Shown piece by piece: positions 952-29,537 of a DNA stretch of 64,000 nt (the stretch's first letter is position 1; each line of letters starts with the position of its first letter). The DNA lies in the IMG/VR virus record IMGVR_UViG_3300032296_003307, positions 204,740 to 268,739 of that record, one strand, 5' to 3'. The notes below the pieces were generated by a model that saw only the letters and a list, made by a program, of their open reading frames with translations, was not told where the DNA came from and ran no database searches. The translations under genes were made by a program, and so were the position numbers.

Positions 952-1575
952 ATGGAATATACATTAAAAGGTTATGGTTGGTCCATGGAAGCCGTGGGTA
1001 AAGCAATCACAGATGAACAGATTGAAATCATTAAGAAAAAATTAGAAGAAGAAGGTAATCCTGAACTTTGGACAATCCGACACGATTTTGACGAATTGCT
1101 CGGAATTGATATATGGGATGGCGATTTATTTCACATATCAAAACCTTTGGATAATGGTACTGCTCGTTTTGAATTAGTCGGTACAGACGATAAGGTCATT
1201 TTTGAGTTTGGTATTGAAGACGTATCAAGCATTTATGCCATTATGGACAACTACGATGAAATATATGGATTAGAAGAACAAGACGCATATCCAAAACCTA
1301 GTGGTCCAAAACACGTATATTTGTCTATTGACGAAAGTAAGGGTGGTTTGATGAGTTGGGTTTTTGAATCAGATGAAGAACCAAAAATTGAAGATTTCCA
1401 TTTTTCTACAGGATGCGTGGCAACACCTAAAGGTGATTGGGACTATCTTGATAAGGTTTTCTTTAAGGGTCAACCAATTGAAGTTTACGATTGGCTTGAT
1501 AATTGGGGTAAAGGTGCGACTATCGAGATTTACTCTTGGGATGACCAAGACGGTGATTACTCAACAATTTCTTAA
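952..1575 (+). CDS. Hypothetical acidic protein
   Basis: 207-aa ORF, co-oriented with its neighbours, A-rich leader. Confidence 0.7.
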   Translation: MEYTLKGYGWSMEAVGKAITDEQIEIIKKKLEEEGNPELWTIRHDFDELLGIDIWDGDLFHISKPLDNGTARFELVGTDDKVIFEFGIEDVSSIYAIMDNYDEIYGLEEQDAYPKPSGPKHVYLSIDESKGGLMSWVFESDEEPKIEDFHFSTGCVATPKGDWDYLDKVFFKGQPIEVYDWLDNWGKGATIEIYSWDDQDGDYSTIS

Positions 1576-3322: not shown

Positions 3323-3354
3323 TTTGGCAAATCAAAAATAAAGTTGTAATTTTG
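3323..3354 (+). promoter_or_regulatory. Bacteroidota housekeeping-sigma promoter (-33 TTTG / -7 TAnnTTTG) for the tRNA array
   Basis: TTTG at 3323-3326, 20-nt spacer, TAATTTTG at 3347-3354. Confidence 0.75.
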
Positions 3355-3388
3355 TATCGTTGTTGAAAGAAACATCTGAAACAACAAA

Positions 3389-3400
3389 GTTCTTTGACAT
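3389..3400 (+). promoter_or_regulatory. boxA-like antitermination element
   Basis: GTTCTTTGACAT resembles rrn boxA (TGCTCTTTAACA-type) and lies 15 nt before the first tRNA. Confidence 0.65.
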
Positions 3401-3415
3401 ATTGGAAAAACACAT

Positions 3416-3487
3416 GGCCCCTTCGTCTATCGGCTAGGACATATCCCTTTCACGGATAAAAGACGGGTTCGATTCCCGTAGGGGCTA
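3416..3487 (+). tRNA. tRNA-Glu(UUC)
   Basis: Acceptor GGCCCCT/AGGGGCT, anticodon arm TATCC-CTTTCAC-GGATA, T-loop TTCGATT. Confidence 0.95.
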
Positions 3488-3493
3488 CAAAAC

Positions 3494-3628
3494 ATCTCCG
3501 TAACTGTTAAAACGGTGAGTGGGTAAATGATGGTTGATTGGTCTGACACTACTTATACTAGTTTGTAGAGAAAAGTCAGAGCACTAAACAAGTAATTTAC
3601 AAGATGGGTTCGATTCCCATCGGAGATT
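3494..3628 (+). ncRNA. tRNA-like RNA with a greatly extended central arm
   Basis: Acceptor ATCTCCG/CGGAGAT, T-arm ATGGG-TTCGATT-CCCAT, mini D-arm ACTG/CGGT, nested helices GTAAAT/ATTTAC, TCTGAC/GTCAGA and CTAC/GTAG. Confidence 0.7.
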
Positions 3629-3634
3629 CAAAAT

Positions 3635-3708
3635 GCCACCATAGCTTTAATTGGTAGAGCACCTGACTTGTAATCAGGGGGTTGGCGGTTCGAATCCGTC
3701 TGGTGGCT
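3635..3708 (+). tRNA. tRNA-Thr(UGU)
   Basis: GCCACCA/TGGTGGC acceptor, CCTGA-CTTGTAA-TCAGG anticodon arm. Confidence 0.95.
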
Positions 3709-3757
3709 CAAACTCAAGGAGTAATTAACCTTGAACTGTCAGGTTCGAAACTGACGA

Positions 3758-3849
3758 TTGATTATGGTGTAATAGGGCACACTGGCCTTAGTTGCTTCTT
3801 AACAGAAGTGGACGGGGCTGGGGATTGGGTTCGATTCCCTTTAATCAGC
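3758..3849 (+). ncRNA. tRNA-like RNA with an elongated anticodon arm
   Basis: TTGATTA/TAATCAG acceptor, D-arm GTGT-AATAGG-GCAC, long arm CTGGCC...GCTTCT-TAAC-AGAAGT...GGCTGG, T-arm GGG-TTCGATT-CCC. Confidence 0.7.
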
Positions 3850-3853
3850 AAAT

Positions 3854-4382
3854 GACCCCACAATTAACAGTAGTACTCGACTGTTATGGTGTGTGAACCC
3901 GACTTGAAGTCTTCGGGGCTATGGGGGATAGATACACTTGACGTGAAATTTGTATAACCTCTTATAAACGGGGTTAACCGACATGGGGAAGTTCAGTCGG
4001 GTACATCGGGAACAAGTATGACTGAGTCCCCCATTATGGATTAAGGGGGTTAGGGGCTTTAATTAGTCGTAATACAATCCACAAGTTGTAGAAACACTGG
4101 ACAATTCTACAATATACACTCTTCTTCCGAGTGAGACCAGACACGTAACTATGTGGTAGGGTGAAGATGTCCTGAGGGTAATATCGTTGTTAATTGTAAG
4201 GCTTATGGTCCGAAAGGATAAGTTGAAACCCAAAGGCACAACGGTATGATAGTACAGACCTACCTTGGATGGTTACTATGTTCTGACGAATCTTGGAAAT
4301 ATAGGTAGGGATATTAATTCGCCAACTATTAAAACTTAAAGGTGTTCCTATAATGGCGTAGGGATGATTCAACACCTTTTTT
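3854..4382 (+). ncRNA. Large structured non-coding RNA candidate (~520 nt)
   Basis: No credible ORF, GC content above the flanks, many helices including a long-range 10-bp pairing 3860-3869/4188-4197. Confidence 0.6.
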
Positions 4383-4386
4383 ACAT

Positions 4387-4464
4387 CGCGGGATGGACTG
4401 GAGATGGTACCAGCTGAGTCTCATAAGCTCAATCACGGGGGTTCGAATCCCTCTCCCGCTACCA
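4387..4464 (+). tRNA. tRNA-Met(CAU), atypical (C1.U72 mismatch, encoded CCA)
   Basis: CGCGGGA/TCCCGCT-A-CCA, anticodon arm TGAGT-CTCATAA-GCTCA. Confidence 0.85.
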
Positions 4465-4467
4465 AAT

Positions 4468-4538
4468 CGTGGATTGGTGTAATGGTAACATATTGGGCTC
4501 ATAACCCAAAGTTCCGAGTTCGAGTCTCGGGTCCGCAA
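4468..4538 (+). tRNA. Initiator tRNA-fMet(CAU)
   Basis: C1.A72 mismatch and three consecutive G-C pairs in TTGGG-CTCATAA-CCCAA. Confidence 0.92.
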
Positions 4539-4544
4539 CTAAAT

Positions 4545-4584
4545 GCCGGAGGACTCCCATGATAGTCCCATGGGTCCGGCTCCA
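4545..4584 (+). ncRNA. CCA-ended tRNA minihelix-like element
   Basis: GCCGGA/TCCGGC stem stacked on CCCATG/CATGGG with a 7-nt loop, followed by T-CCA. Confidence 0.55.
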
Positions 4585-4585
4585 T

Positions 4586-4657
4586 GCGGGTGTCGTATAA
4601 AGGCTATTACTTCAGCCTTCCAAGCTGAAGATGGGAGTTCGATTCTCCCCACCCGCT
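4586..4657 (+). tRNA. tRNA-Gly(UCC)
   Basis: GCGGGTG/CACCCGC-T, TCAGC-CTTCCAA-GCTGA. Confidence 0.95.
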
Positions 4658-4662
4658 CAAAA

Positions 4663-4735
4663 GCGAGAGTGGCTCAGTTGGTAGAGCATGACCTTGCCAA
4701 GGTCAGGGTCGCCAGTTCGAACCTGGTCTCTCGCT
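4663..4735 (+). tRNA. tRNA-Gly(GCC)
   Basis: GCGAGAG/CTCTCGC-T, TGACC-TTGCCAA-GGTCA. Confidence 0.95.
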
Positions 4736-4805
4736 CGAATGTGAATCTTAAAAAGGGCACTTCCGTCTCGTTGAGCGGCACGCTGAGCCCGGATTCACAT
4801 ATCAC

Positions 4806-4877
4806 GGTCTCATAGTTAATCGGCTATAATATCGCCCTGTCACGGCGAAGTGCCGGGTTCGATTCCCGGTGGGACCG
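4806..4877 (+). tRNA. tRNA-Asp(GUC)
   Basis: GGTCTCA/TGGGACC-G, TCGCC-CTGTCAC-GGCGA. Confidence 0.95.
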
Positions 4878-5075
4878 CAAAATTCAGTCAGGGTCGAGCC
4901 ACGTTGTGCCACGACTGAATGATAGGTAAGGAAGGACAAGAGGTGGCCGTGACTACTCCTTACCGTTAATTTATGTATTTATTGGTATGTTTAAACGACT
5001 ACTAAAATACTTGGAATCAATAGAACAACACAGAATGAACGCCATTATTTTTGGTGGAAAAGGGTTGTTGTAGTT

Positions 5076-5149
5076 GGGCTGTTAGCTCAGATGGCTAGAG
5101 CACCTGCCTTGCACGCAGGGGGTCGAGAGTTCGAGTCTCTCACGGTCCA
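5076..5149 (+). tRNA. tRNA-Ala(UGC)
   Basis: G3.U70 pair, CCTGC-CTTGCAC-GCAGG. Confidence 0.95.
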
Positions 5150-5233
5150 CAAGATGAGTTTCCCTACACCTTTGGGTTAGTAACTAGTTAAAGGGGGACA
5201 AAAGTGGTATACAAGTCCACGACTCATCCACTT

Positions 5234-5310
5234 CGGGATGTTGGGGAGCCCGGTCACCCCGCCTGCTTTGGGAGCAGGAGAACTCGCAGGTTCGAATCCT
5301 GCCATCCCGA
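5234..5310 (+). tRNA. tRNA-Pro(UGG)
   Basis: CGGGATG/CATCCCG-A, CCTGC-TTTGGGA-GCAGG. Confidence 0.95.
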
Positions 5311-5354
5311 CAAAATTTTTTCAATATGTCAAAAACTTTTCTTATCTTTGTAAT

Positions 5355-5663
5355 ATGAAACAAAAAATTAATAAACTCGGTGCTTTGGTATCTGTAATGA
5401 TATGGTTTGTTCTTATAACCATCTTAGGTATCTTTTTGACTTCTTGTGGTAAGCCAAAGAACAGGATTGAAAAAGGTGATATTGTTCAGAAGTGTCAGAT
5501 TGATTCTATTAATGTTTTACCACAGCATTCAACAATCGAACCTGACAGGAAGTGTGAATATTTTACAAGTTGTGGAAGTAGAATTGTGTCACATGAAGGC
5601 GCTTTCAGGGTTGGTGATACTGTGACTTACGTATATAAGAAATCTAATAGTCAGAAAAACTGA
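5355..5663 (+). CDS. Putative lipoprotein
   Basis: The likely start is ATG 5355, after TAtcTTTG at 5343-5350. Hydrophobic stretch followed by lipobox LTSC. Confidence 0.7.
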   Translation: MKQKINKLGALVSVMIWFVLITILGIFLTSCGKPKNRIEKGDIVQKCQIDSINVLPQHSTIEPDRKCEYFTSCGSRIVSHEGAFRVGDTVTYVYKKSNSQKN

Positions 5664-6300
5664 TTAACTTTTTTATACGGTTCATAGATTCTGTCATACC
5701 GTCTTGGTAATCATATTTTCCAACATAAACGTCAGGATATTGTACGGTAATTGGATATTTTTTGCCGATTCTTTCCATAATATCATCCTGAATCGCTTCA
5801 GGACTATTCTCACTTAAATCGTCAAGTTCTGATTGAAACATACTTACTTTTTCTTCAAATTCAAAATCACCAAATTCTAAATTTGGGTAATATTTTTCAA
5901 CCACTTCATCCATTTTATTTGTATTTAAATCTCCAATAGTAACTACCGTTCCGTCGGCCATTTTTACAGTGCTGTTTGGATAAATTAAAACAGAATCTAA
6001 TTCTAAATCGTACGAAATTAAAATAGATGAAGTACGTATTGGTTCAATAGCATAATTCGTAACTTTATAAATTAATTTGGCGTAAGGGGTTTCTACAATT
6101 CCGGGGTTTTCAATTACCTCAGAAATAAGTTTAAAATAGTTTTTTTCACCACCGTAATATTCAACAATATAAGGTAAAAAATCTTCCAAGCCCCAACTTT
6201 CTTTCCCTATAAATCTTGAAACTTGATTTAAATTATATACATCAACACCTCTGGCATCCCAAAGTTTAAATAGTACTTTTTTTTCTTGGTCTGTTAACAT
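5644..6300 (-). CDS. Hypothetical protein, paralog of 6302-7084
   Basis: Shares KKxLxxxWxxxG, YYGG and PxST motifs and the C-terminal ESxxRIKxLISFSDY with its neighbour. Confidence 0.75.
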   Translation of the reverse strand: MLTDQEKKVLFKLWDARGVDVYNLNQVSRFIGKESWGLEDFLPYIVEYYGGEKNYFKLISEVIENPGIVETPYAKLIYKVTNYAIEPIRTSSILISYDLELDSVLIYPNSTVKMADGTVVTIGDLNTNKMDEVVEKYYPNLEFGDFEFEEKVSMFQSELDDLSENSPEAIQDDIMERIGKKYPITVQYPDVYVGKYDYQDGMTESMNRIKKLISFSDY

Positions 6301-6301
6301 A

Positions 6302-7084
6302 TTAATAATCTGAAAAAGATATTAAATTTTTTATTCTAATTACTGACTCGTTCAGATTTCCCAAATCAAAATCAACAATTTCAACTTTTGGTATATTTGG
6401 TTTTGGTGTAGGTGATGTTTGAACAAAAAATTTTTCTCGGGCAATTTTATTTAAGTAATCACTGGCGTTTTCTTTAATAGTTTCAATTAGTTCCTTAAAA
6501 TCTCCGTATATTTCTTTTTGATATTGTATATATTCTTCGCTACCAACTTCAATTTGAGGTAAATATTTTTCCATAAGTTGTTTGATTCCTAAATTTTTGA
6601 TTTCCAAAACAGGAATATATGTTGTTTCCCTGTTAAGGGTTGTGAACTTAAGAGTTGAACTTGGATGTAAATAAATTTTTTTCAAATACATTTTTGTGTT
6701 TTTAGGAACGCCATTATCATAGTAGGTTTGTACTAATTGTATGTCACCTAATTTTAAAAAAATGGTACCCATTGGGTTAATTAACGAACGGTCTTTTTTT
6801 GTTTCCTTTTTATAGACACCAAACTCCTGTAATATTTTTTCTTTGTATTTTTCTAATCCGCCGTAGTAATCAAAAAATAAATCGGTATAATATTCAGGTT
6901 GTAATTTATCTTTTGTGTAATAACCCACAAAACGTAAATCGCTTTCTAACCTATTTGGGTCAAAACCTTTTTTATTCCAAATAATGGATAGGATTTTTTT
7001 CTGATTTGGTGTTAATCTAGGTTCTCTTAAACCAAAAATTTTTTTTAGGTCAAATTCGTTAATTAGAGAAATTTTATTACCCAT
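6302..7084 (-). CDS. Hypothetical protein, paralog of 5644-6300
   Basis: Same shared motifs as 5644-6300. TATTTAT on the sense strand at 7091-7097. Confidence 0.75.
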   Translation of the reverse strand: MGNKISLINEFDLKKIFGLREPRLTPNQKKILSIIWNKKGFDPNRLESDLRFVGYYTKDKLQPEYYTDLFFDYYGGLEKYKEKILQEFGVYKKETKKDRSLINPMGTIFLKLGDIQLVQTYYDNGVPKNTKMYLKKIYLHPSSTLKFTTLNRETTYIPVLEIKNLGIKQLMEKYLPQIEVGSEEYIQYQKEIYGDFKELIETIKENASDYLNKIAREKFFVQTSPTPKPNIPKVEIVDFDLGNLNESVIRIKNLISFSDY

Positions 7085-7149
7085 GATTTTATAAATATTT
7101 GTTTTTTTAATTAAACTGATATATATTTGTAAGGTAATGTAATAAAGAT

Positions 7150-7278
7150 ATGGGAAAGTTCAGTTATGATGACTTTAACGAGGAAGAACAACCACGTAAA
7201 GGGTCAAGAAACGACAAAAAAGAGAGCAAGAAACCTAAACTTACAGACAAAACAAAAAAACCTAAAAAACCGAAATAA
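7150..7278 (+). CDS. Small Lys-rich basic protein (42 aa)
   Basis: MGKFSYDDFNEEEQPRKG...KKPKKPK, downstream of the promoter TTTG(7098-7101)-N20-TATATTTG(7122-7129). Confidence 0.6.
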   Translation: MGKFSYDDFNEEEQPRKGSRNDKKESKKPKLTDKTKKPKKPK

Positions 7279-7280
7279 CA

Positions 7281-7481
7281 ATGTCAAACAAAGAAAAAAA
7301 ACCAATTAATGCGGAAAATCTACAGAAGATTTCAAACGGAAATGAAATCCACATTAATATTGGAAAAAAATTCTTTGATATGGGTGATGTTGAGGTCATA
7401 GAAATACAAAGACCCAAAGAACCCGTCTACGGTGAAGATGAGTGGGATAATATACACGGAGATATAGTACACTTCACCTAA
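7281..7481 (+). CDS. Small hypothetical protein
   Basis: 66-aa ORF starting 2 nt after the upstream stop. Confidence 0.6.
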   Translation: MSNKEKKPINAENLQKISNGNEIHINIGKKFFDMGDVEVIEIQRPKEPVYGEDEWDNIHGDIVHFT

Positions 7482-7488
7482 TCAATAT

Positions 7489-7562
7489 AGACGGGTGGCG
7501 CAATAGGTTAGCGCAGGATTCTTATACAATCAAGGTTACGGGTTCAAGTCCCGTCTCGTCTA
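7489..7562 (+). tRNA. tRNA-Ile(UAU)
   Basis: AGACGGG/CTCGTCT-A, anticodon loop CTTATAC, T-loop TTCAAGT. Confidence 0.88.
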
Positions 7563-7566
7563 CTTC

Positions 7567-7640
7567 GGGCCTTTAGCTCAGTCGGTCAGAGCAGGACACT
7601 CATAATGTCAAGGTCGTAGGTTCGAACCCTACAAGGCCCA
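7567..7640 (+). tRNA. tRNA-CAU (probably Ile2/lysidine type; elongator Met not excluded)
   Basis: GGGCCTT/AAGGCCC-A, anticodon loop CTCATAA, paired 1:72. Confidence 0.85.
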
Positions 7641-7691
7641 CAAATTATAATTTTATTCCTTTTTTTATTGAGTTATCCATATTTATTTATT

Positions 7692-8318
7692 ATGGATTTT
7701 ACTCAGATTATTATTACCCTGTTAACTTCAATTACTTCTGTTATTGTTGCACTTATAACCGCAGGGTTTATTCGTAGAAAAGATGACAAAGCAAAGGCGG
7801 AAAAATCTAAAAAACAATTAATAGACCAAATTCAAAAAGACGAGTTGATTCACGCAACTCTAAGGGAAATAAGAAGAAAATATAACGCTGATAGAGTATT
7901 CATAACTCAGTTCCATAACGGAGGTACGTTTTATACTAATTCACCAATGCAGAAAGCGTCGGTAACATACGAAAGATGTTCAGATGGATTAAAAAGAATT
8001 GCTGACCAATTTCAGAATTATTTGGTGAGCAATCTTTCTTGGTACGCATCTAAAGTACTTAAAAACCAAGCTTTTTTTTATGACATTGATGAAGTTGTTG
8101 ACGATATAATAATGAAAAGTGTTTTTAAAAATTACTCTACGTGGGCACACGCCGCGGTTCCAATAATGGATAATAATAAAAATCCCATAGCGGTACTTGC
8201 CATGGATTGGGTCATATCAGAACTACCTGTTGAGTATGTCGATGATGAAGATTTTAACGATGAGTTTACCGAAGAATTTACAAAAGACGGAAATTCCTTA
8301 AAAACATACTTAATGTGA
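7692..8318 (+). CDS. Membrane-anchored GAF-like protein, candidate holin
   Basis: Start MDFTQ after TATTTAT 7680-7686. One N-terminal TM helix, then a GAF-like pattern (NADRVFITQFHNG...AVPI...PIAVLAMD). Confidence 0.55.
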   Translation: MDFTQIIITLLTSITSVIVALITAGFIRRKDDKAKAEKSKKQLIDQIQKDELIHATLREIRRKYNADRVFITQFHNGGTFYTNSPMQKASVTYERCSDGLKRIADQFQNYLVSNLSWYASKVLKNQAFFYDIDEVVDDIIMKSVFKNYSTWAHAAVPIMDNNKNPIAVLAMDWVISELPVEYVDDEDFNDEFTEEFTKDGNSLKTYLM

Positions 8319-8330
8319 TATTTATAATAT

Positions 8331-8960
8331 ATGTCTGACATTATTGCAGGAAATTTTCAGTGGAAGTCTAACGGAGGTCCTCGTAATCACCCATCAGGTT
8401 CTTGGAAATTATCTAATGCGTGGGATTTAGAGTCCAGAGAGGGTAATGATGTGTTTTCCGCTGTTAATGGAATGGTAACCGAAAAACAAAGTCCGTCAAC
8501 ACCAGGTCATCTGTATGGTACATCGATAACTATAAGAGGTGAAGGTTCCTACCCAACTATTTTTTATAGTAATTTAAGTTCTGTAAATGTTAACGTAGGG
8601 TCACAAGTTAGAGTCGGTGATAAACTAGGTGAAATTGCAAACGCGCCGGCAGGTACATCCCCTTATATACACATAGCTCTACCAATTGGAAAAGATATAA
8701 CATCGATTATAAGTAACAACGGTTCTTTTGTATCTCCATCTGGTTCATCTTCAGGTGTTGAGGATGCCGCGGTCGCCGCAGGAGCCGCAGGAGCGACTGC
8801 GTTGGCTAGTGGTGATGGTAAAAAAGATAATGGAGATGGTGGAAGTTTTATGGACAAATTTTATGGTACTTTAACCAAAGGTTTATTACCCTTTGGATTA
8901 GTTACGGGTGTTGCCGGTATGAAAGAAGAGGTCGAAAGAATTAAAGAACTTATGAAATAA
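8331..8960 (+). CDS. M23 peptidase-like protein
   Basis: DL...VFSAVNGMV...YGTSITI...YSNL...VNVGSQVRVGDKLG...PYIHI matches the M23 fold pattern; the metal-binding motifs are partly degenerate. Confidence 0.7.
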   Translation: MSDIIAGNFQWKSNGGPRNHPSGSWKLSNAWDLESREGNDVFSAVNGMVTEKQSPSTPGHLYGTSITIRGEGSYPTIFYSNLSSVNVNVGSQVRVGDKLGEIANAPAGTSPYIHIALPIGKDITSIISNNGSFVSPSGSSSGVEDAAVAAGAAGATALASGDGKKDNGDGGSFMDKFYGTLTKGLLPFGLVTGVAGMKEEVERIKELMK

Positions 8961-8988
8961 AAAAACCCACTCAGAGTGGGTTTTTTTA
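8961..8988. terminator. Bidirectional intrinsic terminator
   Basis: A-run, CCCACT-CAG-AGTGGG, T-run, between convergent genes. Confidence 0.8.
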
Positions 8989-9005
8989 ATGTTGTTAATT
9001 ACTGA

Positions 9006-9191
9006 TTACTTTTTTGTTTCTTCTTTTTTTACTTCTTTAGTACACGTGTCTTTACAAGTAGAATCTTTCTTACAAGTATCAACACATTCTTTCTTCGTTG
9101 TTGTGTCTACAACGGCTTGTTCAGTTGAGTTCGAACATGAAACGAAAGTTAACATAGTAATTGTTACGAATGCGATAAATAAATTTTTCAT
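9006..9191 (-). CDS. Small Cys-rich lipoprotein
   Basis: MKNLFIAFVTITMLTFVSC lipoprotein signal, then repeated CxDT/DST units. Confidence 0.7.
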   Translation of the reverse strand: MKNLFIAFVTITMLTFVSCSNSTEQAVVDTTTKKECVDTCKKDSTCKDTCTKEVKKEETKK

Positions 9192-9282
9192 TTTTCTTTT
9201 TATTAATTATACAAAATTAAATATATAAAAAAAAGGTAAAGTTCGCCATATTTATTGTGTATAGTAAAAATATTTATCATTT

Positions 9283-9639
9283 ATGGAACATTTAAAAAAA
9301 ATTATACACGAAAGTTTGGGACGTGTTCTCAAAGAACAAATGGCTGCCCCAATGGAGGGACAAAAACAAGCGACGCAACAACCTCAAAAATCTATTAAAC
9401 CTAAAAAAGACGAAATTAAAGTTCCTGAAAATTGTTTTGGCGGACCTAAAAAACAAGCCGGTGGTTTAGTCGCTTTAATTCAAGTATTAATGAAGGATAG
9501 TGATAGAAACGGTGAAAGAGCGGTTGAGGAAATTAAAAGATTCTCAGAAGGTAAATCTAAACCTGACCCTAAAGAAGTGGTACAAATTTTAAACAAATAC
9601 AACAAACAAAAATATTTGGGATACGCAGGTTGTTTCTAA
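9283..9639 (+). CDS. Hypothetical protein
   Basis: 118 aa; TATTTAT at 9271-9277. Confidence 0.7.
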   Translation: MEHLKKIIHESLGRVLKEQMAAPMEGQKQATQQPQKSIKPKKDEIKVPENCFGGPKKQAGGLVALIQVLMKDSDRNGERAVEEIKRFSEGKSKPDPKEVVQILNKYNKQKYLGYAGCF

Positions 9640-9658
9640 TTTAAAAAATATTAAAAAG

Positions 9659-9686
9659 AAAAGGTGGTCAATGACCACCTTTTTTT
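9659..9686. terminator. Bidirectional terminator (ends the tmRNA and the convergent CDS)
   Basis: AAAAGGTGGTCA-A-TGACCACCTTTT inverted repeat with a T-run. Confidence 0.8.
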
Positions 9687-9691
9687 GTTTG

Positions 9692-10072
9692 TGGAGGTGG
9701 AGGGTATCGAACCCTCGTCCAGTCTACCTTGACTGTAAGGTACTACACGTTTAGGTTAACATTTGCTAATGTTCCAAACTTCACAATTCCCTTATTTTAT
9801 AGTGGTTCGGTTTACTGAGAACTAATCCTCCACTTGTTTCTTTTAAGATAGAAACCACACCTCTAAAGGACTTATGTTCCTAGGTTAATGTCCTCCCGAC
9901 CTGAGTGTTATAGCGATTAGGCTACAACTGAAGCCTCTTCACGGAACAAACCGCAAGCTGCCATGTTATTTAAAACGTTGCCGTCTAATTGGTTAAATCA
10001 GTTTTTAATGAGTTAATTCAGCTCATACGTGCACCTTACCTTCAAAAATACCTGTCAAATCCAGTCACCCCC
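9692..10072 (-). ncRNA. ssrA: tmRNA
   Basis: 5' GGGGGTGACTGGATTTGAC, 3' GAGGG-TTCGATA-CCCTC-CACCTCC-A with G3.U70. Tag ORF 9982-9917 encodes (A)GNVLNNMAACGLFREEASVVA. Confidence 0.92.
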
Positions 10073-10075
10073 ATA

Positions 10076-10098
10076 TTTCAAAGAACACTACAAATATA
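10076..10098 (-). promoter_or_regulatory. Host-type -7 promoter plus boxA-like element for tmRNA
   Basis: On the minus strand, TATATTTG (10098-10091) followed by GTTCTTTGAAA (10086-10076). Confidence 0.65.
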
Positions 10099-10138
10099 CT
10101 AACACTATAAATATATTCCAAGTATTTATAAGAAACAT

Positions 10139-14299: not shown

Positions 14300-16306
14300 T
14301 TAAACTTTTTCTATCTTAATTATTTCGTCAAATTTCAAGACGTAATTTTCACCTTCAATTACATTACCAACCAAGTATTCTTCTGAAATATAATCTTCAA
14401 CTTCATCTTGAATCGCTCTTTTAATCGGTCTGGCACCGAATGTTTCGTCAAACCCGACTTTGGCAATATGTTCAATTATGGTATCGTCAAATTCAAAGTT
14501 AAGTTTTAATTCTGTTAACCTGTCTTTAAGTTTTACTATTTCCAATTTAACAATTTTTTCAATTTCGGGTTGTTTCAAAGAGTTAAAAACAATAACTTCA
14601 TCAATACGATTTAAAAATTCAGGAGAGAAATAATTTTTCATTTCTTTTTGAAGAATTTGACGCTTGTACTCTTCTTGTGTTGAAGAGCTTGATGCGGTTG
14701 AAAAACCAATCTGAGTTCCAAAATCTTGTAATTTTTTAACCCCTAAGTTTGAAGTCATAATAATCAAACAATTTTTAAAGTTGATTTTTCTACCTAAAGA
14801 ATCAGTTAAATGACCTTCATCTAACATCTGTAACAATGTGTTAAAGATTTCTTTGTTTGCCTTTTCAACTTCATCAAACAGAATTACCGAATAAGGTTTG
14901 TTCTTAACTTGTTCGGTTAACTGTCCACCTTCATCGTAACCAACATAACCAGGAGGAGCACCAATCAATTTGGAAATGGTGTGTTTTTCTTGAAACTCAG
15001 ACATATCTACACGGATAAGATTGTCTTCACTACCAAAGATTTGTTTTGCCAATTGTTTTGCCAAGTGAGTCTTACCAACACCTGTTGAACCCAAGAAAAT
15101 GAATGAACCGATAGGTTTATTTGGGTCTTTAATTCCCAACCTATTTCTGCGAATTGATTTTGCAATTTTGGTAACCGCCTCATCTTGTCCAATAACTTTG
15201 TCCATCAGAGATTTGTCTAAGGCAATTAAGTTTGTTTTATCATCAACAGATATTTTAGAAACAGGAATTTTAGTCATAGAAGAAACGACATCCAAAACAA
15301 GTTCAGGTAAAATCTCGCGTTTCTTTTCTGACATTTCTATCTCATACCTTTCCTTTTCATTTTCTAACTTACTGGCAATTTTTTTCTCTTTGTTCCGTAA
15401 TTCTGCCGCCTCTTCATATTTTTGTCTTTTCACAACATCTTTTTTCTTTTCACTTATTTCTCTGAGTTGTGCGGTAAGTTTTTCTATGATTTCAGGTACT
15501 TTGGCCTCTACTTGTGCACGAGCACCAACCTCATCCATAATGTCAAACGCTTTGTCAGGAAACTCTCTGTCGGTAATGTATCTATCAGCCAAATTAACAC
15601 AAAGCTCAAGTACTTCATCAGAATAACTTACTTTGTGATATTCTTGATACTTTGTTCTTAGATTTTTAAGAATTAATAATGTTTCTTTTTTTGATGGTGA
15701 ATCAACAACTACTTTTTGAAATCTGCGTTCTAACGCACCGTCTTTTTCAAAGTTTGTTCTGTATTCATCTAGTGTTGTTGCTCCGATACATTGAATTTCA
15801 CCACGAGCAAGGGCGGGTTTAAATATATTAGAGGCGTCCATAGAGCCCGATGCGTTACCCGCACCAACTATAGTATGAATTTCATCGATAAAAACAATAA
15901 TTTCGGGGTTTTTTGACAATTCTTCAATAATTACTTTTAATCTTTCTTCAAACTGACCACGATATTTTGTTCCAGCAACAATTGATGTCATATCCAATAG
16001 AACAATCCTCTTACTCAATAAGTTACGTGGACAATCACCATTAAAAATTTTCATGGCGAGACCTTCAACAATTGCGGTTTTACCACAACCTGGCTCTCCT
16101 ATGATTATTGGATTGTTTTTCTTTCTTCTTGAAAGAATTTGAGCAATTCGTTGTATTTCACGTTCTCTACCAATTACAGGGTCTAATCTACCTTCTGACG
16201 CCAATTTTATTAGGTCTTTTGAGAAGTTATCCAATACGGGTGTAGATGAACTGTTACGTCTACTTTGCGGTTTTACATTTTCGTTGTCGTCCATTGATTC
16301 AATCAT
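14300..16306 (-). CDS. clpC: ClpC/ClpA-type AAA+ chaperone lacking the Clp N-terminal domain
   Basis: Two Walker A motifs (GEPGCGKT, GSTGVGKT), pore loops KYRG and GYVG, UVR-like middle domain and IGF ClpP-docking loop. Start MIES follows TATATTTG at 16318-16311. Confidence 0.92.
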   Translation of the reverse strand: MIESMDDNENVKPQSRRNSSSTPVLDNFSKDLIKLASEGRLDPVIGREREIQRIAQILSRRKKNNPIIIGEPGCGKTAIVEGLAMKIFNGDCPRNLLSKRIVLLDMTSIVAGTKYRGQFEERLKVIIEELSKNPEIIVFIDEIHTIVGAGNASGSMDASNIFKPALARGEIQCIGATTLDEYRTNFEKDGALERRFQKVVVDSPSKKETLLILKNLRTKYQEYHKVSYSDEVLELCVNLADRYITDREFPDKAFDIMDEVGARAQVEAKVPEIIEKLTAQLREISEKKKDVVKRQKYEEAAELRNKEKKIASKLENEKERYEIEMSEKKREILPELVLDVVSSMTKIPVSKISVDDKTNLIALDKSLMDKVIGQDEAVTKIAKSIRRNRLGIKDPNKPIGSFIFLGSTGVGKTHLAKQLAKQIFGSEDNLIRVDMSEFQEKHTISKLIGAPPGYVGYDEGGQLTEQVKNKPYSVILFDEVEKANKEIFNTLLQMLDEGHLTDSLGRKINFKNCLIIMTSNLGVKKLQDFGTQIGFSTASSSSTQEEYKRQILQKEMKNYFSPEFLNRIDEVIVFNSLKQPEIEKIVKLEIVKLKDRLTELKLNFEFDDTIIEHIAKVGFDETFGARPIKRAIQDEVEDYISEEYLVGNVIEGENYVLKFDEIIKIEKV

Positions 16307-16343
16307 ACCACAAATATACAACTATGTTTCATATTATCAACTA

Positions 16344-23507: not shown

Positions 23508-25280
23508 ATGGCAATAACTAAAGAACAGTTACTTTTAGAGAAAGCGAGATGTATTAAAAGTACATACTACGCACTTAAAACGTACTTACAAACTTACGAC
23601 AACACACAATCAAAATATGTTCCGTTGGAACTATTTCCTGACCAACAAAGGTTAATTGAAGATTATGATAAATATAACGAAAACATTGCGTTAAAGTATC
23701 GTCAGGCGGGTGTGTCTACGGTAACCGCCGCTTGGGTGTCTAAAAAATTAGTCTTCGCTAATTCACAACAACCTGAAAAAATATTGATAATCGCCAACAA
23801 GCTTGACACCGCAGTGGAAATGGCAAACAAAGTTAGAGAATTTACCGAACAATGGCCCAAGTGGTTGAATGTTGGTTTTTCTCCTGAAAAAAATGCAGCA
23901 AGACATTTTAAGTTAACAAATAAGTGTGAAGTAAAAGCGGTGGCAACATCAAAAGACGCACTTCGTGGTTATACCCCAACCATACTTATATTTGATGAGG
24001 CGGCTTATATAGACGCTGACGATGATTTTTGGGCGGCTTGTATGGCATCACTTTCCACAGGTGGTAAAGTGATTGTAATTTCAACCCCAAACGGATATGA
24101 CCCAATTTATTACAGTATTTACGAACAAGCAAACAAAGGGGTTAACGAATTTAAAATTTCCGACATGTATTGGTACCGTGACCCAAGATACACGAGGGAT
24201 TTATACATGGTAAAAACAGAAAGTTTGGTTGATTATCTATTAGATAGAAACAATTTTCCAAACACAGAAATACTGGATTTAAGTGGTAATCCATTTGAAA
24301 GGGATATTGAAAAGGTTCAAGAGTTAATTTCCCAAGGGTACAAACCATGTTCGGCTTGGTTCGAATCCATGGTTAAAAAACTTAAATTTGACAAAAGAAA
24401 AATATCACAGGAATTAGAATGTAATTTTTTGGGTTCAGGTGATAACGTATTTGATTCTAATTTGCTTCACAAAATTTCCGAAACTATGATAAAAGAACCG
24501 TCATCAAAAATGATGACAAATAGTTTGTGGATTTGGAAAGAACCTATTATGGGTCACAAATATGTTATGGGTGTCGACGTATCTCGTGGCGACTCTGAAG
24601 ACTTTTCATCAATCCAAATTATCGATTTTGATGAAAGAGAACAAGTATTGGAGTATGTTGGAAAAACACCTCCTGATATGTTGGCTGAAATTGCCTACAA
24701 ATGGGCTACTATGTATTCGGCGTATATTGTAGTCGATATTACCGGTGGTATGGGGGTTGCCACATCAAGAAAACTACAAGAACTTGGATATAGGGATTTA
24801 TATGTTGATGGTGTTGAAATGGGAAATAAATGGAAATACGACCCAAAGACCGCTGATAAAATACCTGGCATCAACTTCAATTCTAAACGTGTTCAAATTA
24901 TCAGTTCGTTTGAAGAAGGAATTAGACATGGTTTTAAAATCTATTCATTAAGATTATTGAATGAAATGAACACGTTTGTTTATATAAATGGAAGACCCGA
25001 CCACATGAAAGGTCAGCATGATGACTTGTTAATGAGTTTGGCAATGGCGATTTATGTAAGTGAAATGTCATTCACTCAATTGAAAAAAGTGGACGATTTA
25101 ACAAAAGTTATGTTAGAATCTTGGACAGTAAATAAACACGATAATTCCGCAATAACCGATTTTAATCCAAATATACCGGTATTTGTTAATGACGATAATA
25201 AGAATATTTTTAGAAATCAACCGACAAGACAAGATTATCAAGATTATAGATGGGTCTTCGGAGGAATGGGGTTTAAATAA
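23508..25280 (+). CDS. terL: Terminase large subunit (T4 gp17-like)
   Basis: LKYRQAGVST ATPase motif, ILIFDEAA Walker B, ISTPNG coupling motif, nuclease motifs GVDVSRG and HDDL. Confidence 0.95.
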   Translation: MAITKEQLLLEKARCIKSTYYALKTYLQTYDNTQSKYVPLELFPDQQRLIEDYDKYNENIALKYRQAGVSTVTAAWVSKKLVFANSQQPEKILIIANKLDTAVEMANKVREFTEQWPKWLNVGFSPEKNAARHFKLTNKCEVKAVATSKDALRGYTPTILIFDEAAYIDADDDFWAACMASLSTGGKVIVISTPNGYDPIYYSIYEQANKGVNEFKISDMYWYRDPRYTRDLYMVKTESLVDYLLDRNNFPNTEILDLSGNPFERDIEKVQELISQGYKPCSAWFESMVKKLKFDKRKISQELECNFLGSGDNVFDSNLLHKISETMIKEPSSKMMTNSLWIWKEPIMGHKYVMGVDVSRGDSEDFSSIQIIDFDEREQVLEYVGKTPPDMLAEIAYKWATMYSAYIVVDITGGMGVATSRKLQELGYRDLYVDGVEMGNKWKYDPKTADKIPGINFNSKRVQIISSFEEGIRHGFKIYSLRLLNEMNTFVYINGRPDHMKGQHDDLLMSLAMAIYVSEMSFTQLKKVDDLTKVMLESWTVNKHDNSAITDFNPNIPVFVNDDNKNIFRNQPTRQDYQDYRWVFGGMGFK

Positions 25281-25306
25281 ATCAATATCAAATTATATTT
25301 AAAGAT

Positions 25307-27124
25307 ATGAGCGATAATTTAACAATATGGCAAAGGCTGAGTCAGACATTTGGTCCTGATTCACTTCTTGGTCAAGATTCACCAGTATACAAATACGATA
25401 AGAAAGAATTACTTAGAACTACAGATAGAGCTCAATATGAGTTAGAAAAACTACAGGCACAACAAACTGCGTTTCTATCTAATCAATGGGCGAAGATTGA
25501 AAACAATCTGTATCAACAAGCCGTATATTACGAACCAACAAGACTTTCTGCGTTTTATGACTACGAAAGTATGGAATATACTCCTGAAATTTCTGCGGCG
25601 TTAGATGCGTACGCCGAAGAATCTACTACTGTAGATGAAGATGGTTACATGTTACAGATTTATTCCGAATCAAAAAGAATAAAATCAATATTAACCGATT
25701 TGTTTAACAATGTAATGGACATTAACACCAACTTACCTATGTGGACAAGAAACACATGTAAGTATGGTGATAATTTTGTGTTCTTAAAATTGGACCCTGA
25801 AAAAGGAATTGTGGGTTGTTTCCAACTACCTAATATTGAAATGGAGCGTATTGAGAGAGGTATGACACCACAAACAGTGGCAACCGCAGAGAACGAACAA
25901 AAAGCCCTTAAGTTTGCGTGGAAGAACAAACAAATGGAATACCAATCTTGGGAGGTTGCTCACTTCCGTTTATTGGGTGACGATAGAAGATTGCCTTACG
26001 GAACATCTATGTTGGAAAAAGGAAGAAGAACATGGAAACAGTTAGTATTGGCTGAGGACGCAATGTTAATTTACAGAACATCAAGAGCACCTGAAAGACG
26101 TGTATTCAAGGTTTACGTTGGTAACATGGATGACAAAGACGTTCAACCATATGTTCAAAAATTTGCAAACAACTTTAAAAGAGACCAAGTTACCGATTCA
26201 AAAACAGGTAACGTAGACATGAGATTTAACCAAATGGCGGTTGACCAAGATTATTTTGTACCTGTACGTGACCCTGCCGCGCCAAGTCCAATCGATACTT
26301 TACCAGGAGCGCAGAACTTGGCAGAAATTGCTGATATTGAATACATTCAGAAAAAATTATTAACCGCATTAAGAATTCCTAAAGCGTTTTTAGGTTTTGA
26401 AGAAGTTGTGGGTGACGGTAAGAATTTGTCTTTGTTAGATATTCGTTTTGCTCGTACAATTAACAGAATACAAAAATCCATGATTGCAGAACTTAATAAA
26501 ATAGCAATTATACATTTATTCTTGTTAGGGTTCGAAGATGAATTAGGTAACTTTACTTTAGGGTTGACAAACCCATCTAAACAGGCAGACTTGTTAGCGA
26601 TTGATGTTTGGAAAGAAAAAATGTTACTTTATAAAGATGCGGTAACACCAATTGAAGGTATTGCACCAACATCACAATCTTGGGCTAAAAAACATATACT
26701 TGGTTTTTCTGACGATGAGATAAAATTAGATTTACAACAACAAAGATTAGAAAAGGCAGTTTCTGCTGAACTCACAAATACCGCAACTGCAATTCCAAAA
26801 ACAGGTTTATTTGATAATGTTGACAAACTGTACGGTCAACTTAGCGGTAAAACAGGTGGAGCGGTTCCAACACCGGGAGCGGAATTAGGTGGAGCACCTC
26901 CTGATTTAGGTGGCGGAGCACCACCACCACCTCCGCCTCCACCTCCTCCTGGTGGTGAGGAACTTGCTGCGGGTGGCGGAACGTTACCCGAAGAGAAAAT
27001 GGATAAAATAAACATTCTATTGGAAGGAGACTTTTTGACCCCAAATGATTTCTTAGATTTGGGTAAAGCTAAAAATTCTCTGAATGAAATGGATGACGAA
27101 TTAAACAGAATATTAAAATCGTAA
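25307..27124 (+). CDS. Portal protein (T4 gp20-like)
   Basis: LAEDAMLIYRTSRAPERRVFKVYVGNM, DYFVP, IDTLPG and ALRIP are gp20 motifs. Confidence 0.95.
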   Translation: MSDNLTIWQRLSQTFGPDSLLGQDSPVYKYDKKELLRTTDRAQYELEKLQAQQTAFLSNQWAKIENNLYQQAVYYEPTRLSAFYDYESMEYTPEISAALDAYAEESTTVDEDGYMLQIYSESKRIKSILTDLFNNVMDINTNLPMWTRNTCKYGDNFVFLKLDPEKGIVGCFQLPNIEMERIERGMTPQTVATAENEQKALKFAWKNKQMEYQSWEVAHFRLLGDDRRLPYGTSMLEKGRRTWKQLVLAEDAMLIYRTSRAPERRVFKVYVGNMDDKDVQPYVQKFANNFKRDQVTDSKTGNVDMRFNQMAVDQDYFVPVRDPAAPSPIDTLPGAQNLAEIADIEYIQKKLLTALRIPKAFLGFEEVVGDGKNLSLLDIRFARTINRIQKSMIAELNKIAIIHLFLLGFEDELGNFTLGLTNPSKQADLLAIDVWKEKMLLYKDAVTPIEGIAPTSQSWAKKHILGFSDDEIKLDLQQQRLEKAVSAELTNTATAIPKTGLFDNVDKLYGQLSGKTGGAVPTPGAELGGAPPDLGGGAPPPPPPPPPPGGEELAAGGGTLPEEKMDKINILLEGDFLTPNDFLDLGKAKNSLNEMDDELNRILKS

Positions 27125-27135
27125 TATTTATTATC

Positions 27136-27843
27136 ATGAACTTCGGAGAAAAATTTAGTAAAATAGAGTTTTTGTTGTCAGAATCTTACGTTAACAAAAA
27201 CTTAAAAAATGATATCAAAAAATTCCAAAAATTAGTTTTGGAAAATAAAAACGTTGCAAAAATGTATTTTTTGTATTCGGAGCTATCTAAACAACAAGGA
27301 TTTGATAAGAATTTTGCTGAAGATTTTATTACGGAATCTCTTTCACAAATTAAAGATTTATCATCTAAAACAAACTTCAAATCAATCAATCCTTGGATTT
27401 CTAAAGTTGTTTGTGAGAATAGATATTCTGATATAGATAATTTGATAAACAATGACCCTCTGAAATTAAAAGAAAAAATATTAGCAAAATCAAAAATAGT
27501 TGAGTCGTTGACCAAAAAATCAATTCAAAAAGAAAGTGTTAATATTCCTTTAAGTTCAGTTGAGGTTATCAGAAAAAATGTGGTAAAAAACTATATCGAT
27601 TCATTAGATGAATCCACTCAGAATAGTTTAAAAAATCTTTTATCTAAAGACGACAAAGAATTAAAAAATTTATTTGAAGATGTTAAGTCAAAAACTTTAG
27701 ATAAATTAATGGTCGTTTCTGAAGGTAACCACGACGAACTTACCAAGAACAAAATCAACGAAACTATTACGCATGTTAAGAAAGAAGAGTACAACAAATT
27801 CAACTACGTTAGATTAAAGAATCTATACGAAAATTTAGGTTGA
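27136..27843 (+). CDS. Hypothetical protein (head module)
   Basis: 235 aa; TATTTAT at 27125-27131. Confidence 0.75.
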   Translation: MNFGEKFSKIEFLLSESYVNKNLKNDIKKFQKLVLENKNVAKMYFLYSELSKQQGFDKNFAEDFITESLSQIKDLSSKTNFKSINPWISKVVCENRYSDIDNLINNDPLKLKEKILAKSKIVESLTKKSIQKESVNIPLSSVEVIRKNVVKNYIDSLDESTQNSLKNLLSKDDKELKNLFEDVKSKTLDKLMVVSEGNHDELTKNKINETITHVKKEEYNKFNYVRLKNLYENLG

Positions 27844-28032: not shown

Positions 28033-28129
28033 ATATACTAAATAATACGAAAAGTGGAAAAAGTTTGACTGATGAATATACTATGTGTATATTTTTAAAA
28101 AATAAACTTTTCTATTATGATATTTTTTA

Positions 28130-28573: not shown

Positions 28574-28601
28574 TCTTCCATTATATTTATAACTAAAAGT
28601 T

Positions 28602-29312: not shown

Positions 29313-29322
29313 ATTAATTGAC

Positions 29323-29535: not shown

Positions 29536-29537
29536 TC

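What the first reader, a model, noticed from the sequence alone, without database searches (positions are those of the whole stretch)
3389..10098. rrn-style boxA elements ahead of both stable-RNA units
Seen: GTTCTTTGACAT (3389-3400) lies between the promoter and the first tRNA, and GTTCTTTGAAAT (minus strand, 10086-10075) lies between the promoter and the tmRNA. Established: boxA recruits the NusB/NusE/NusG/SuhB complex on rRNA operons. Inference: the phage uses the host rRNA antitermination and folding machinery to transcribe a ~2-kb untranslated array that contains a terminator-like hairpin (4338-4382).
Basis: partly seen in the sequence, partly recalled or inferred. Interest (0 to 1): 0.6.

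Follow-up and report, generated by a model that had tools for sequence, protein, structure and literature searches.

The report
Host rRNA-type boxA on phage stable-RNA genes
A 269-kb freshwater phage of Bacteroidota carries exact copies of its host phylum's ribosomal-RNA "boxA" antitermination signal in front of its tRNA arrays and its tmRNA gene, so it probably borrows the host's rRNA transcription mode to make its own stable RNAs.

Summary
GTTCTTTGAMAT occurs three times in the 268,739-bp phage genome. Each copy is in sense orientation, 3-15 nt before a stable-RNA gene: tRNA-Glu array, tmRNA, and a tRNA-Phe array outside the window.

A matrix built from Bacteroidota rrn boxA sites ranks these three first. 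The fourth hit heads another stable-RNA unit.

The extended 17-mer GTTCTTTGACATATTGG equals the 16S-23S spacer boxA of Sphingobacteriia and Chitinophagia. In 301 sampled Bacteroidota genomes, 20 of its 22 exact copies are shown between tRNA-Ala and 23S.

The motif is conserved before the tmRNA of related phages. In relatives it also heads GOLLD RNA, in a promoter, covarying hairpin, boxA layout. More than 115 viral contigs hold the exact 17-mer, and 38 of 117 sites have a tRNA starting 6-23 nt downstream.

About a third of sampled Bacteroidota tmRNA genes carry the motif too.

The phage encodes no detectable NusB, NusG or RNA polymerase.

The "terminator-like hairpin" is the covarying 3' stem of an unclassified, structured ~540-nt RNA that is abundant in lake metatranscriptomes.

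Binding of Nus factors and antitermination remain inferred. I file this as a new member of a known kind, in a context I found no paper describing.

The parts
3323..3354 (+). Bacteroidota-type promoter of the array: -33 TTTG (3323-3326), 20-nt spacer, -7 TAATTTTG (3347-3354). Predicted start near 3360.
   Evidence: Read. The same consensus recurs before other RNA units. The full pattern occurs 34 times in the genome against 16.2 +/- 3.7 in simulations.
3360..3387 (+). Leader hairpin (TTGTTG ... CAACAA), in the position of boxB, 1 nt before boxA.
   Evidence: MFE fold; the z-score is not significant. Equivalent hairpins before boxA covary in relatives' GOLLD leaders and are common in host rrn leaders.
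3389..3405 (+). boxA, extended 17-mer GTTCTTTGACATATTGG, 10 nt before tRNA-Glu.
   Evidence: Top matrix hit in the genome, 31.3 bits. Identical to the Bacteroidota 16S-23S spacer boxA. Unpaired in the fold.
3416..5311 (+). Untranslated array of about 1.9 kb: 10 tRNAs (Glu, Thr, Leu, Met, Met, Gly, Gly, Asp, Ala, Pro), a 137-nt tRNA-like insert and a ~540-nt structured RNA.
   Evidence: ARAGORN and Rfam. Only short ORFs overlap the RNA genes.
3850..4386 (+). Conserved structured non-coding RNA of unknown class inside the array.
   Evidence: No Rfam match. Homologues lie in 20 viral contigs. 97 predicted pairs, 22 with compensatory changes in 15 sequences. Metatranscriptome contigs reach depth of about 5000 while flanking genes show 0.
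4338..4382 (+).
   Evidence: -12.5 kcal/mol. The stem covaries at several pairs. The U-run is kept in most relatives but not in L341.
10073..10086 (-). boxA of the tmRNA leader, GTTCTTTGAAATAT, ending directly before the mature tmRNA 5' end.
   Evidence: Matrix hit of 19.6 bits. Conserved in 6 of 7 related phages as GTTCTTTGAAAATAT, GTTTTTTGAAATAT or GTTCTTTAACATAT.
10091..10121 (-). Promoter of the tmRNA gene: -33 TTG (10121-10119), 20-nt spacer, -7 TATATTTG (10098-10091). Only 4 nt separate the -7 box from boxA.
   Evidence: Read. The layout is the same in relatives and in host tmRNA genes.
9689..10072 (-). tmRNA gene.
   Evidence: Rfam RF00023, 99.5 bits, E 1.2e-37. ARAGORN did not call it.
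9659..9683 (-). Intrinsic terminator right after the tmRNA.
   Evidence: 11-pair stem followed by a T-run.

Best explanation
These are genuine rrn-type boxA RNA elements. The phage is T4-like and has no detectable RNA polymerase or Nus factors of its own, so host RNA polymerase transcribes its stable-RNA units from Bacteroidota sigma-A promoters.

Proposed mechanism:
1. The nascent leader exposes a single-stranded boxA, GUUCUUUGA(C/A)AUAU(U)GG. This sequence is identical to the host phylum's rrn leader and spacer boxA.
2. Host NusB-S10 binds boxA. Together with NusG, NusA and probably SuhB, it converts the polymerase into the rRNA-type antitermination complex.
3. That complex resists Rho on long untranslated RNA, elongates fast and helps co-transcriptional folding.
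4. The phage can therefore complete its 1.9-kb array of tRNAs plus a structured RNA, and its tmRNA. In relatives the same applies to GOLLD RNA.

Shown here: the sequence identity, placement, conservation, and absence of phage Nus factors or polymerase.
Inferred: Nus binding, Rho resistance and folding help.
For: Placement and statistics
- 3 of 3 exact 12-mers, and the four best hits of a host-derived boxA matrix in 269 kb, precede stable-RNA units.
- The count is 3 against 0.24 expected, and the positional P is about 5e-9.

Match to the host signal
- Host rrn leaders and spacers carry the same core and the same ATATTG extension.
- In 301 Bacteroidota genomes the exact 17-mer occurs 22 times against 1 for the reversed control. 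20 of the 22 copies are shown between tRNA-Ala and 23S; one further locus was too short to show a 23S match.
- The positions critical for NusB-NusE in solved complexes (G2, C5, U6) are kept. The G at position 9 is the tolerated purine (PMC3177189).
- The motif matches 10 of 11 positions of GYTCTTTAANA (PMC5725501).

Conservation
- The motif survives while its flanks diverge. This holds for the tmRNA leaders of relatives, including a TTTA variant identical to the E. coli-type consensus.
- In phage G003 it precedes the tRNA-Glu, tRNA-Pro and tRNA-Leu units.
- In GOLLD leaders, promoter, covarying hairpin and boxA all keep their places.

Spread in viruses
- More than 115 viral contigs hold the 17-mer and none has 23S downstream.
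- 38 of 117 sites have a sense tRNA 6-23 nt downstream.
- An E. coli-type boxA 14-mer used as a control gave 1 of 119.
- 17 sites sit between two tRNAs with 5-15 nt upstream. That leaves no room for a separate promoter, so the motif is transcribed there.

Other support
- An RNA-library contig of a relative runs from a tRNA through a hairpin into boxA.
- boxA is unpaired in the leader fold.
- No NusB, NusG, RNAP-beta or T7-RNAP domain was found in the phage. B. thetaiotaomicron has NusB and NusG.
- The NusB:S10:NusG interface is reported as conserved in Bacteroidota (PMC13753749).
Against:
- At several units (tRNA-Phe here; Glu and Pro in G003; several viral contigs) boxA directly follows a terminator-like hairpin with a U-run. 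Those units then depend on read-through from upstream, which is unexplained.
- The narrow 6-13 nt spacing to the next tRNA is not required for a Nus-loading site. It hints at an added or different role.
- For the tmRNA, the predicted start falls at or inside the first bases of the motif.
- The leader hairpin is not thermodynamically distinctive (z = 0.57).
- Other tRNA units of this phage (Leu-taa, Arg-tct, Leu-Leu-Asn, Ile-Met) and Bacteroides phage DAC19 lack the motif.
- Contigs from RNA libraries cannot prove a single transcript.
Confidence: 0.7

Rival explanations
1. The motif is a DNA promoter element. It would be a -7-box-like TTCTTTG, or a phage-specific promoter, with transcription starting at the conserved GG about 6-8 nt downstream. 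That would give the tmRNA its mature 5' end and the tRNAs a 10-nt leader.
For: - The spacing to the downstream RNA is fixed at 6-13 nt.
- The motif often follows a terminator directly, as a new transcription unit would.
- TTTG is the key part of the Bacteroidota -7 box.
Against: - GTTCTTTG misses both T and A of TAnnTTTG, and no -33 element lies at the right distance.
- Relatives carry TTTA at this place.
- Canonical promoters sit 4, 12 or 35 nt upstream, at variable distance.
- 17 viral sites lie 5-15 nt after another tRNA.
- The motif is never seen before protein genes of this phage.
- Exact identity with the host spacer boxA would be a coincidence.
- An RNA-library contig extends upstream of the motif.
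Confidence: 0.08
2. The motif is an RNA processing or maturation signal rather than a Nus loading site. It would be a leader recognised by an RNase or a chaperone, so that the precursor is cut or folded correctly next to each tRNA or tmRNA.
For: - The spacing to the mature 5' ends is tight: 2 nt for the tmRNA and 6-13 nt for tRNAs.
- The motif occurs between tRNAs inside arrays.
- In rrn operons, boxA regions lie near processing stems (established knowledge).
Against: - In hosts the same 17-mer lies 50-160 nt before the 23S-homologous region, and leader copies lie 40-300 nt before 16S. It is not next to a mature end there.
- In GOLLD units it lies about 450 nt before the start of the Rfam GOLLD match.
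- No pairing partner was seen.
- Most tRNAs of this phage mature without it.
Confidence: 0.1
3. The copies have no transcription function. They would be relics of DNA captured from host rrn spacers, or shared boundaries at which tRNA cassettes recombine between phages.
For: - The sequence is identical to the host spacer, where it also lies next to tRNA genes.
- It flanks many different tRNA genes in many phages.
Against: - The downstream tRNAs (Glu, Phe, Pro, Gln, Lys, Leu, Ser) are not the spacer tRNAs Ile and Ala.
- The motif stays fixed while flanks diverge by 25% or more.
- It always has the sense orientation.
- It also heads tmRNA and GOLLD, behind promoters and covarying hairpins.
Confidence: 0.06

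Closest known systems
boxA of bacterial rrn operons (leader and 16S-23S spacer), the loading site of the rRNA antitermination complex NusB-S10-NusG-NusA-SuhB-S4
   Same: - The sequence is the same. It is identical to the Bacteroidota spacer boxA over 17 nt and fits GYTCTTTAANA at 10 of 11 positions.
- The layout is the same: promoter, hairpin, boxA.
- It lies on the sense strand before long untranslated structured RNA.
   Different: - It lies in a phage genome.
- It heads tRNA arrays, tmRNA and, in relatives, GOLLD rather than rRNA.
- It lies only 2-13 nt before the first mature RNA.
- In other phages it is repeated between tRNAs.
- No boxC was recognised.
nut sites of lambdoid phages (boxA + boxB + N protein)
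   Same: A phage uses a host boxA and Nus factors to make its own transcription termination-resistant. A hairpin lies next to boxA.
   Different: - In lambda the order is boxA then boxB, its boxA deviates from the rrn consensus, and it needs phage protein N bound to boxB.
- Here the hairpin comes before boxA, as in rrn leaders, and the boxA is the full host rrn type.
- No N-like protein was looked for or found.
- The cargo is stable RNA, not delayed-early mRNA.
boxA elements outside rrn in Gammaproteobacteria (suhB leader and other genes; PMC5725501)
   Same: An rrn-consensus boxA alone, placed in a leader outside rrn operons, recruits Nus factors.
   Different: - Those act on protein-coding genes of the bacterium itself, with repression in suhB.
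- Here the targets are phage stable RNAs in another phylum.
- I also saw the motif before about a third of sampled Bacteroidota tmRNA genes.

Membership tests
rrn-type boxA (Nus-factor loading site) | Matches the boxA consensus, including the bases contacted by NusB-NusE (G2, C5, U6; purine at 9). | tested here: met
   GTTCTTTGA(C/A)A matches GYTCTTTAANA at 10 of 11 positions (PMC5725501). G2, C5 and U6 are kept, and G9 is as in Aquifex and is tolerated (PMC3177189)..
rrn-type boxA (Nus-factor loading site) | Same sequence as the boxA of the host's own rrn operons. | tested here: met
   The host species is unknown, so the test was at phylum level. 51 boxA-core sites were found across the 73 leaders examined, and 32 of 38 spacers share the core. 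The exact 17-mer equals the spacer boxA of Sphingobacteriia and Chitinophagia. 20 of 22 genomic copies lie between tRNA-Ala and 23S.
rrn-type boxA (Nus-factor loading site) | Lies on the transcribed strand, downstream of a promoter, in the leader of a long untranslated RNA. | tested here: met
   Consensus promoters lie at 3323-3354 and 10091-10121. The orientation is sense at all units. An RNA-library contig contains the motif. Starts were not mapped.
rrn-type boxA (Nus-factor loading site) | Placed non-randomly and conserved in relatives. | tested here: met
rrn-type boxA (Nus-factor loading site) | Single-stranded in the nascent RNA, with a neighbouring boxB-like hairpin; boxC downstream. | tested here: inconclusive
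   boxA is unpaired and a hairpin lies 1 nt upstream, but the fold is not distinctive. The hairpin covaries in GOLLD leaders of relatives. No boxC was identified. A conserved ATATTGG extension follows instead.
rrn-type boxA (Nus-factor loading site) | Binds NusB-S10 and confers resistance to Rho-dependent termination. | not testable with these tools
   Needs binding assays and reporters. Only the factor inventory was checked: none in the phage, while NusB and NusG are present in B. thetaiotaomicron.
lambdoid nut site | boxA followed by a boxB hairpin bound by a phage N protein. | tested here: not met
   The hairpin precedes boxA, in rrn order. No hairpin follows it before the tRNA. An N-like protein was not searched for.
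Bacteroidota sigma-A promoter (-33 TTTG / -7 TAnnTTTG) | The motif itself fits the -7 box and has a -33 element 19-21 nt upstream. | tested here: not met
   GTTCTTTG lacks the TA. No TTTG or TTG lies at the right distance at the array sites. Relatives have TTTA.

The most novel reading that the evidence does not exclude
In Bacteroidota and their phages, the rrn boxA may be a general tag for stable RNA rather than an rRNA-only signal. Host tmRNA genes carry it. Phages place it before, and between, tRNA genes, and before tmRNA, GOLLD and a new ornate ~500-nt RNA. All this RNA cargo would then be made and folded by the hijacked rRNA antitermination complex. The many phage copies might also draw NusB-S10 away from host rrn operons during infection.
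Probability: 0.3. Interest if true: 0.75.

Novelty: new member of a known kind. Interest (0 to 1): 0.62.

Why it matters
boxA and the Nus factors are textbook for rRNA operons and for lambda. In four full-text searches of the held paper library I found no paper on a host-type boxA in front of phage tRNA arrays, phage or bacterial tmRNA genes, or GOLLD RNA.

If it works as proposed:
- It explains how large phages get long untranslated, highly structured RNA operons past Rho using the host polymerase.
- It links the unexplained GOLLD RNA, and a new structured RNA, to the rRNA-style transcription and folding machinery.
- It gives a simple 17-nt marker for finding stable-RNA units, and for predicting a Bacteroidota host, in viral metagenomes.

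It is directly testable with NusB-S10 binding assays and boxA-mutant reporters.

Tried and rejected
- Near-identity search of the region against isolated phages found only tRNA-sized hits and no close relative.
- Relatives cannot be drawn for a virus record. An 'of' value must be a G handle.
- The phylum-wide boxA survey of Arnvig 2008 is not held. I derived the Bacteroidota boxA directly from 80 rrn loci instead.
- The sigma-70 scan gave no more sites than shuffles, and this phylum uses another consensus.
- The promoter reading of the motif was rejected for the reasons listed under the rival explanations.
- The 11-mer is not strikingly over-represented across whole bacterial genomes, and most copies there are in coding DNA. 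The signal is positional, not a matter of count.
- Bacteroides phage DAC19, an isolate with a related tRNA-Met, has no boxA before its tRNAs.
- An E. coli-type boxA 14-mer in viral contigs has a tRNA downstream in 1 of 119 sites. I used this as a control.
- Rfam gave nothing for 3850-4386, even at E <= 10.
- MFE z-scores of the leader hairpin, of the hairpin at 4338-4382 and of the 537-nt RNA are not significant. The structure claim rests on covariation only.
- GOLLD is absent from this genome.
No spliced or joined model was used.

Full report
**What the window is.** The window is the last 64 kb of a 268,739-bp viral record with 32.4% G+C.
- The genome has 30 ARAGORN tRNAs and a tmRNA.
- It encodes a T4-type terminase, portal and major capsid protein.
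- Near-identical DNA occurs in freshwater metagenomes of at least nine studies.
- No close isolate exists. The nearest portal proteins are about 35-39% identical: a Microcystis phage, an uncultured phage and a Flavobacterium phage.
- Hundreds of IMG/VR contigs encode portals 71-86% identical.
- Bacteroidota-type promoters (TTTG, 18-21 nt, TAnnTTTG) occur 34 times against 16.2 +/- 3.7 expected, and they stand before the RNA genes.

**Observation.**
- The array unit reads: -33 TTTG 3323-3326, -7 TAATTTTG 3347-3354, hairpin 3360-3387, boxA 3389-3405, tRNA-Glu from 3416.
- The tmRNA unit, on the minus strand, reads: -33 TTG 10121-10119, -7 TATATTTG 10098-10091, boxA 10086-10073, tmRNA 10072-9689, terminator 9683-9659.
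- In the whole genome the 12-mer occurs three times against 0.24 expected.
- The third copy precedes tRNA-Phe, the first of an 11-tRNA array 5 kb before the window.
- The two array sites share 17 nt, GTTCTTTGACATATTGG, each 10 nt before the tRNA.
- The chance that three random sites all fall within 30 nt upstream, in sense, of one of 31 stable-RNA starts is about 5e-9.

**Is it the host's boxA?** I fetched 80 Bacteroidota rrn loci using a 16S pattern.
- 73 leaders had at least 150 nt of upstream sequence. Across them, 51 G[AT]TC[AT]TTGA sites lie 40-300 nt before 16S. The usual order is -7 box, hairpin, A-rich stretch, then the motif followed by ATTG(G/A).
- In the 16S-23S spacer, 32 of 38 loci carry the motif, mostly as G[TA]TC[TA]TTGACATATTG. 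Flavobacteriia have GTTCATTGACATATTG. Pedobacter, Mucilaginibacter, Flavihumibacter and a Chitinophagia MAG have exactly the phage 17-mer.
- In 301 genomes sampled across the phylum, the 17-mer occurs 22 times against 1 for the reversed control. 20 of the 22 copies are shown between tRNA-Ala and 23S; one further locus was too short to show a 23S match.
- A 23-nt matrix built from these host sites was scanned over both strands of the phage genome. It ranks the three sites first, at 31.3, 22.5 and 19.6 bits.
- The fourth hit (15.4 bits, genome 203590) heads yet another unit: -7 box, strong hairpin, GTTCTTTGAAA, then about 200 nt of unknown RNA and three long tRNA-like genes.
- The 9-mer core occurs eight times in the genome. 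The four copies away from RNA units lack the extension.
- The motif keeps the bases that matter in solved NusB-NusE-boxA complexes (PMC3177189) and fits GYTCTTTAANA at 10 of 11 positions (PMC5725501).

**Conservation.**
- Six of seven related phages keep the motif right before their tmRNA, while the promoter-to-motif distance changes from 4 to 12 nt. One lineage has GTTCTTTAACATAT, the E. coli-type consensus. That argues against a TTTG promoter box.
- Phage G003 has the motif before its tRNA-Glu, tRNA-Pro and tRNA-Leu units as well as its tmRNA.
- Six of 16 relatives' contigs encode GOLLD RNA. Each GOLLD gene has a promoter, a hairpin that covaries (TCGGA/TCCGA against TGAGG/CCTCA), 4 nt, then boxA, about 450 nt before the start of the Rfam GOLLD match.
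- Among the 117 sites, none has 23S downstream. 38 have a sense tRNA starting 6-23 nt after the 17-mer (all but one within 13 nt), 21 have a tRNA ending 5-32 nt before it, and 17 lie between two tRNAs.
- An E. coli-type 14-mer used as a control gave 1 of 119.

**Host tmRNA genes.** In a phylum sample, 10 of 29 tmRNA genes have a core with at most one mismatch in the 30 nt before the mature 5' end. Only 5 of 1888 control windows do. The motif often sits right after a -7 box. The phage tmRNA leader therefore copies a host arrangement that I did not find described.

**Mechanism.**
- The phage has no detectable NusB, NusG, RNAP-beta or T7-type polymerase domain. B. thetaiotaomicron has NusB and NusG.
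- boxA-NusB-S10-NusG is the established core of the rrn antitermination complex, and its interfaces are reported as conserved in Bacteroidota (PMC13753749).
- I therefore infer that host polymerase starting at the phage promoters is converted by boxA into the rRNA mode. That would protect 0.4-2 kb of untranslated RNA from Rho and aid folding.
- boxA is unpaired in the predicted leader.
- A freshwater RNA-library contig of a relative runs from a tRNA through a small hairpin into boxA, at depth 30. Flanking protein genes have depth 0. This is weak support that the motif is transcribed from upstream.

**Open points.**
- Several units have boxA right behind a terminator-like hairpin with a U-run, so they depend on read-through.
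- The narrow spacing to the next tRNA is unexplained.
- Not all tRNA units carry the motif.

**The 'terminator-like hairpin'.** Positions 3850-4386 are a conserved structured RNA with no Rfam match.
- Homologues occur in 20 viral contigs.
- In 15 sequences, 97 pairs are predicted and 22 show compensatory changes. Only 2.3% of cells are non-canonical. Two variable insertions are present.
- The hairpin at 4338-4382 is this RNA's covarying 3' stem-loop. The U-run is kept in most relatives but not all.
- Metatranscriptome contigs cover 3840-4320 at summed depths up to about 5000.
- The hairpin may still act as a partial terminator that a boxA-modified polymerase reads through, but that is not shown.

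**Known or new.** The element is a canonical boxA, so I file it as a new member of a known kind. In four full-text searches of the held paper library I found no paper on boxA before phage tRNA arrays, tmRNA or GOLLD. The library covers open-access papers and bioRxiv preprints only.

Noticed in passing
window 3850-4386 (+): A conserved, structured ~420-540-nt RNA lies directly after a long-arm tRNA. It has no Rfam match. Homologues occur in 20 viral contigs, and 22 of 97 predicted pairs covary in 15 sequences. It is very abundant in freshwater metatranscriptome contigs. It may be a new large 'ornate' phage RNA, in the same tRNA-adjacent context as GOLLD and ROOL.
   Followed up: partly
L225:8640-9562 (relative G012); also L443, L445, L440: In relatives, GOLLD RNA (RF02032, 306-327 bits) is headed by promoter, covarying hairpin and boxA. 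This genome has no GOLLD.
   Followed up: partly
L261, L263, L265, L267, L269, L270, L272, L277, L279, L280 (bacterial tmRNA loci): 10 of 29 sampled Bacteroidota tmRNA genes carry a boxA-like core in the 30 nt before the mature 5' end, against 0.26% of control windows.
   Followed up: partly
G000:C1:199300-199520 (L001:1310-1530), outside the window: The tRNA-Phe unit reads: -7 box TATCTTTG, a 31-codon ORF, then a segment (GTGAGTTCGGGT) that can pair with the 5' arm of the terminator-like hairpin, then U-run, boxA and tRNA-Phe. It looks like an attenuator. Not analysed.
   Followed up: no
G000:C1:203520-204400 (L007:700-1560), about 400 nt before the window: A fourth boxA-led unit: promoter, GC-rich hairpin, GTTCTTTGAAA, about 200 nt of unknown RNA and three unusually long tRNA-like genes of 90-106 nt. 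ARAGORN misses them; the Rfam tRNA model scores them 38-41 bits.
   Followed up: partly
window 3493-3629 (+): A 137-nt element with tRNA-like ends (acceptor ATCTCCG/CGGAGAT and a T-arm) lies between tRNA-Glu and tRNA-Thr. No tRNA tool calls it. An RNA-library contig of a relative lacks exactly this stretch.
   Followed up: no
G000:C1 about 182450-182461 (-), outside the window: A one-mismatch variant, TGTTCTTTAAAT (E. coli-like A at position 8), lies 12 nt before the tRNA-Ser pair.
   Followed up: no
L287, L293, L298, L300, L301 and about 10 more; also L297, L304, L321 and L296, L306, L336: In other viral contigs, the 17-mer is followed by recurring conserved sequences that are neither tRNA nor 23S. 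One group starts TAAAATGGTGTTTTGGAAGCC. These may be further boxA-led RNAs or operons.
   Followed up: no
L449 (IMG/VR contig), around 1132-1145 (-): This is the only case among 119 sites where an E. coli-type boxA (TGCTCTTTAACAAT) lies 8 nt before a tRNA. It hints that the arrangement may exist outside Bacteroidota phages.
   Followed up: no
window 14300-16321 (-); 23508-33208 (+): A ClpB/ClpA-like double AAA+ ATPase is encoded. T4-type terminase, portal (Gp20) and major capsid (Gp23) genes mark this as a T4-like jumbo phage.
   Followed up: no
window 9689-10072 (-): ARAGORN did not report the tmRNA that Rfam finds at 99.5 bits. The tag peptide was not worked out.
   Followed up: no
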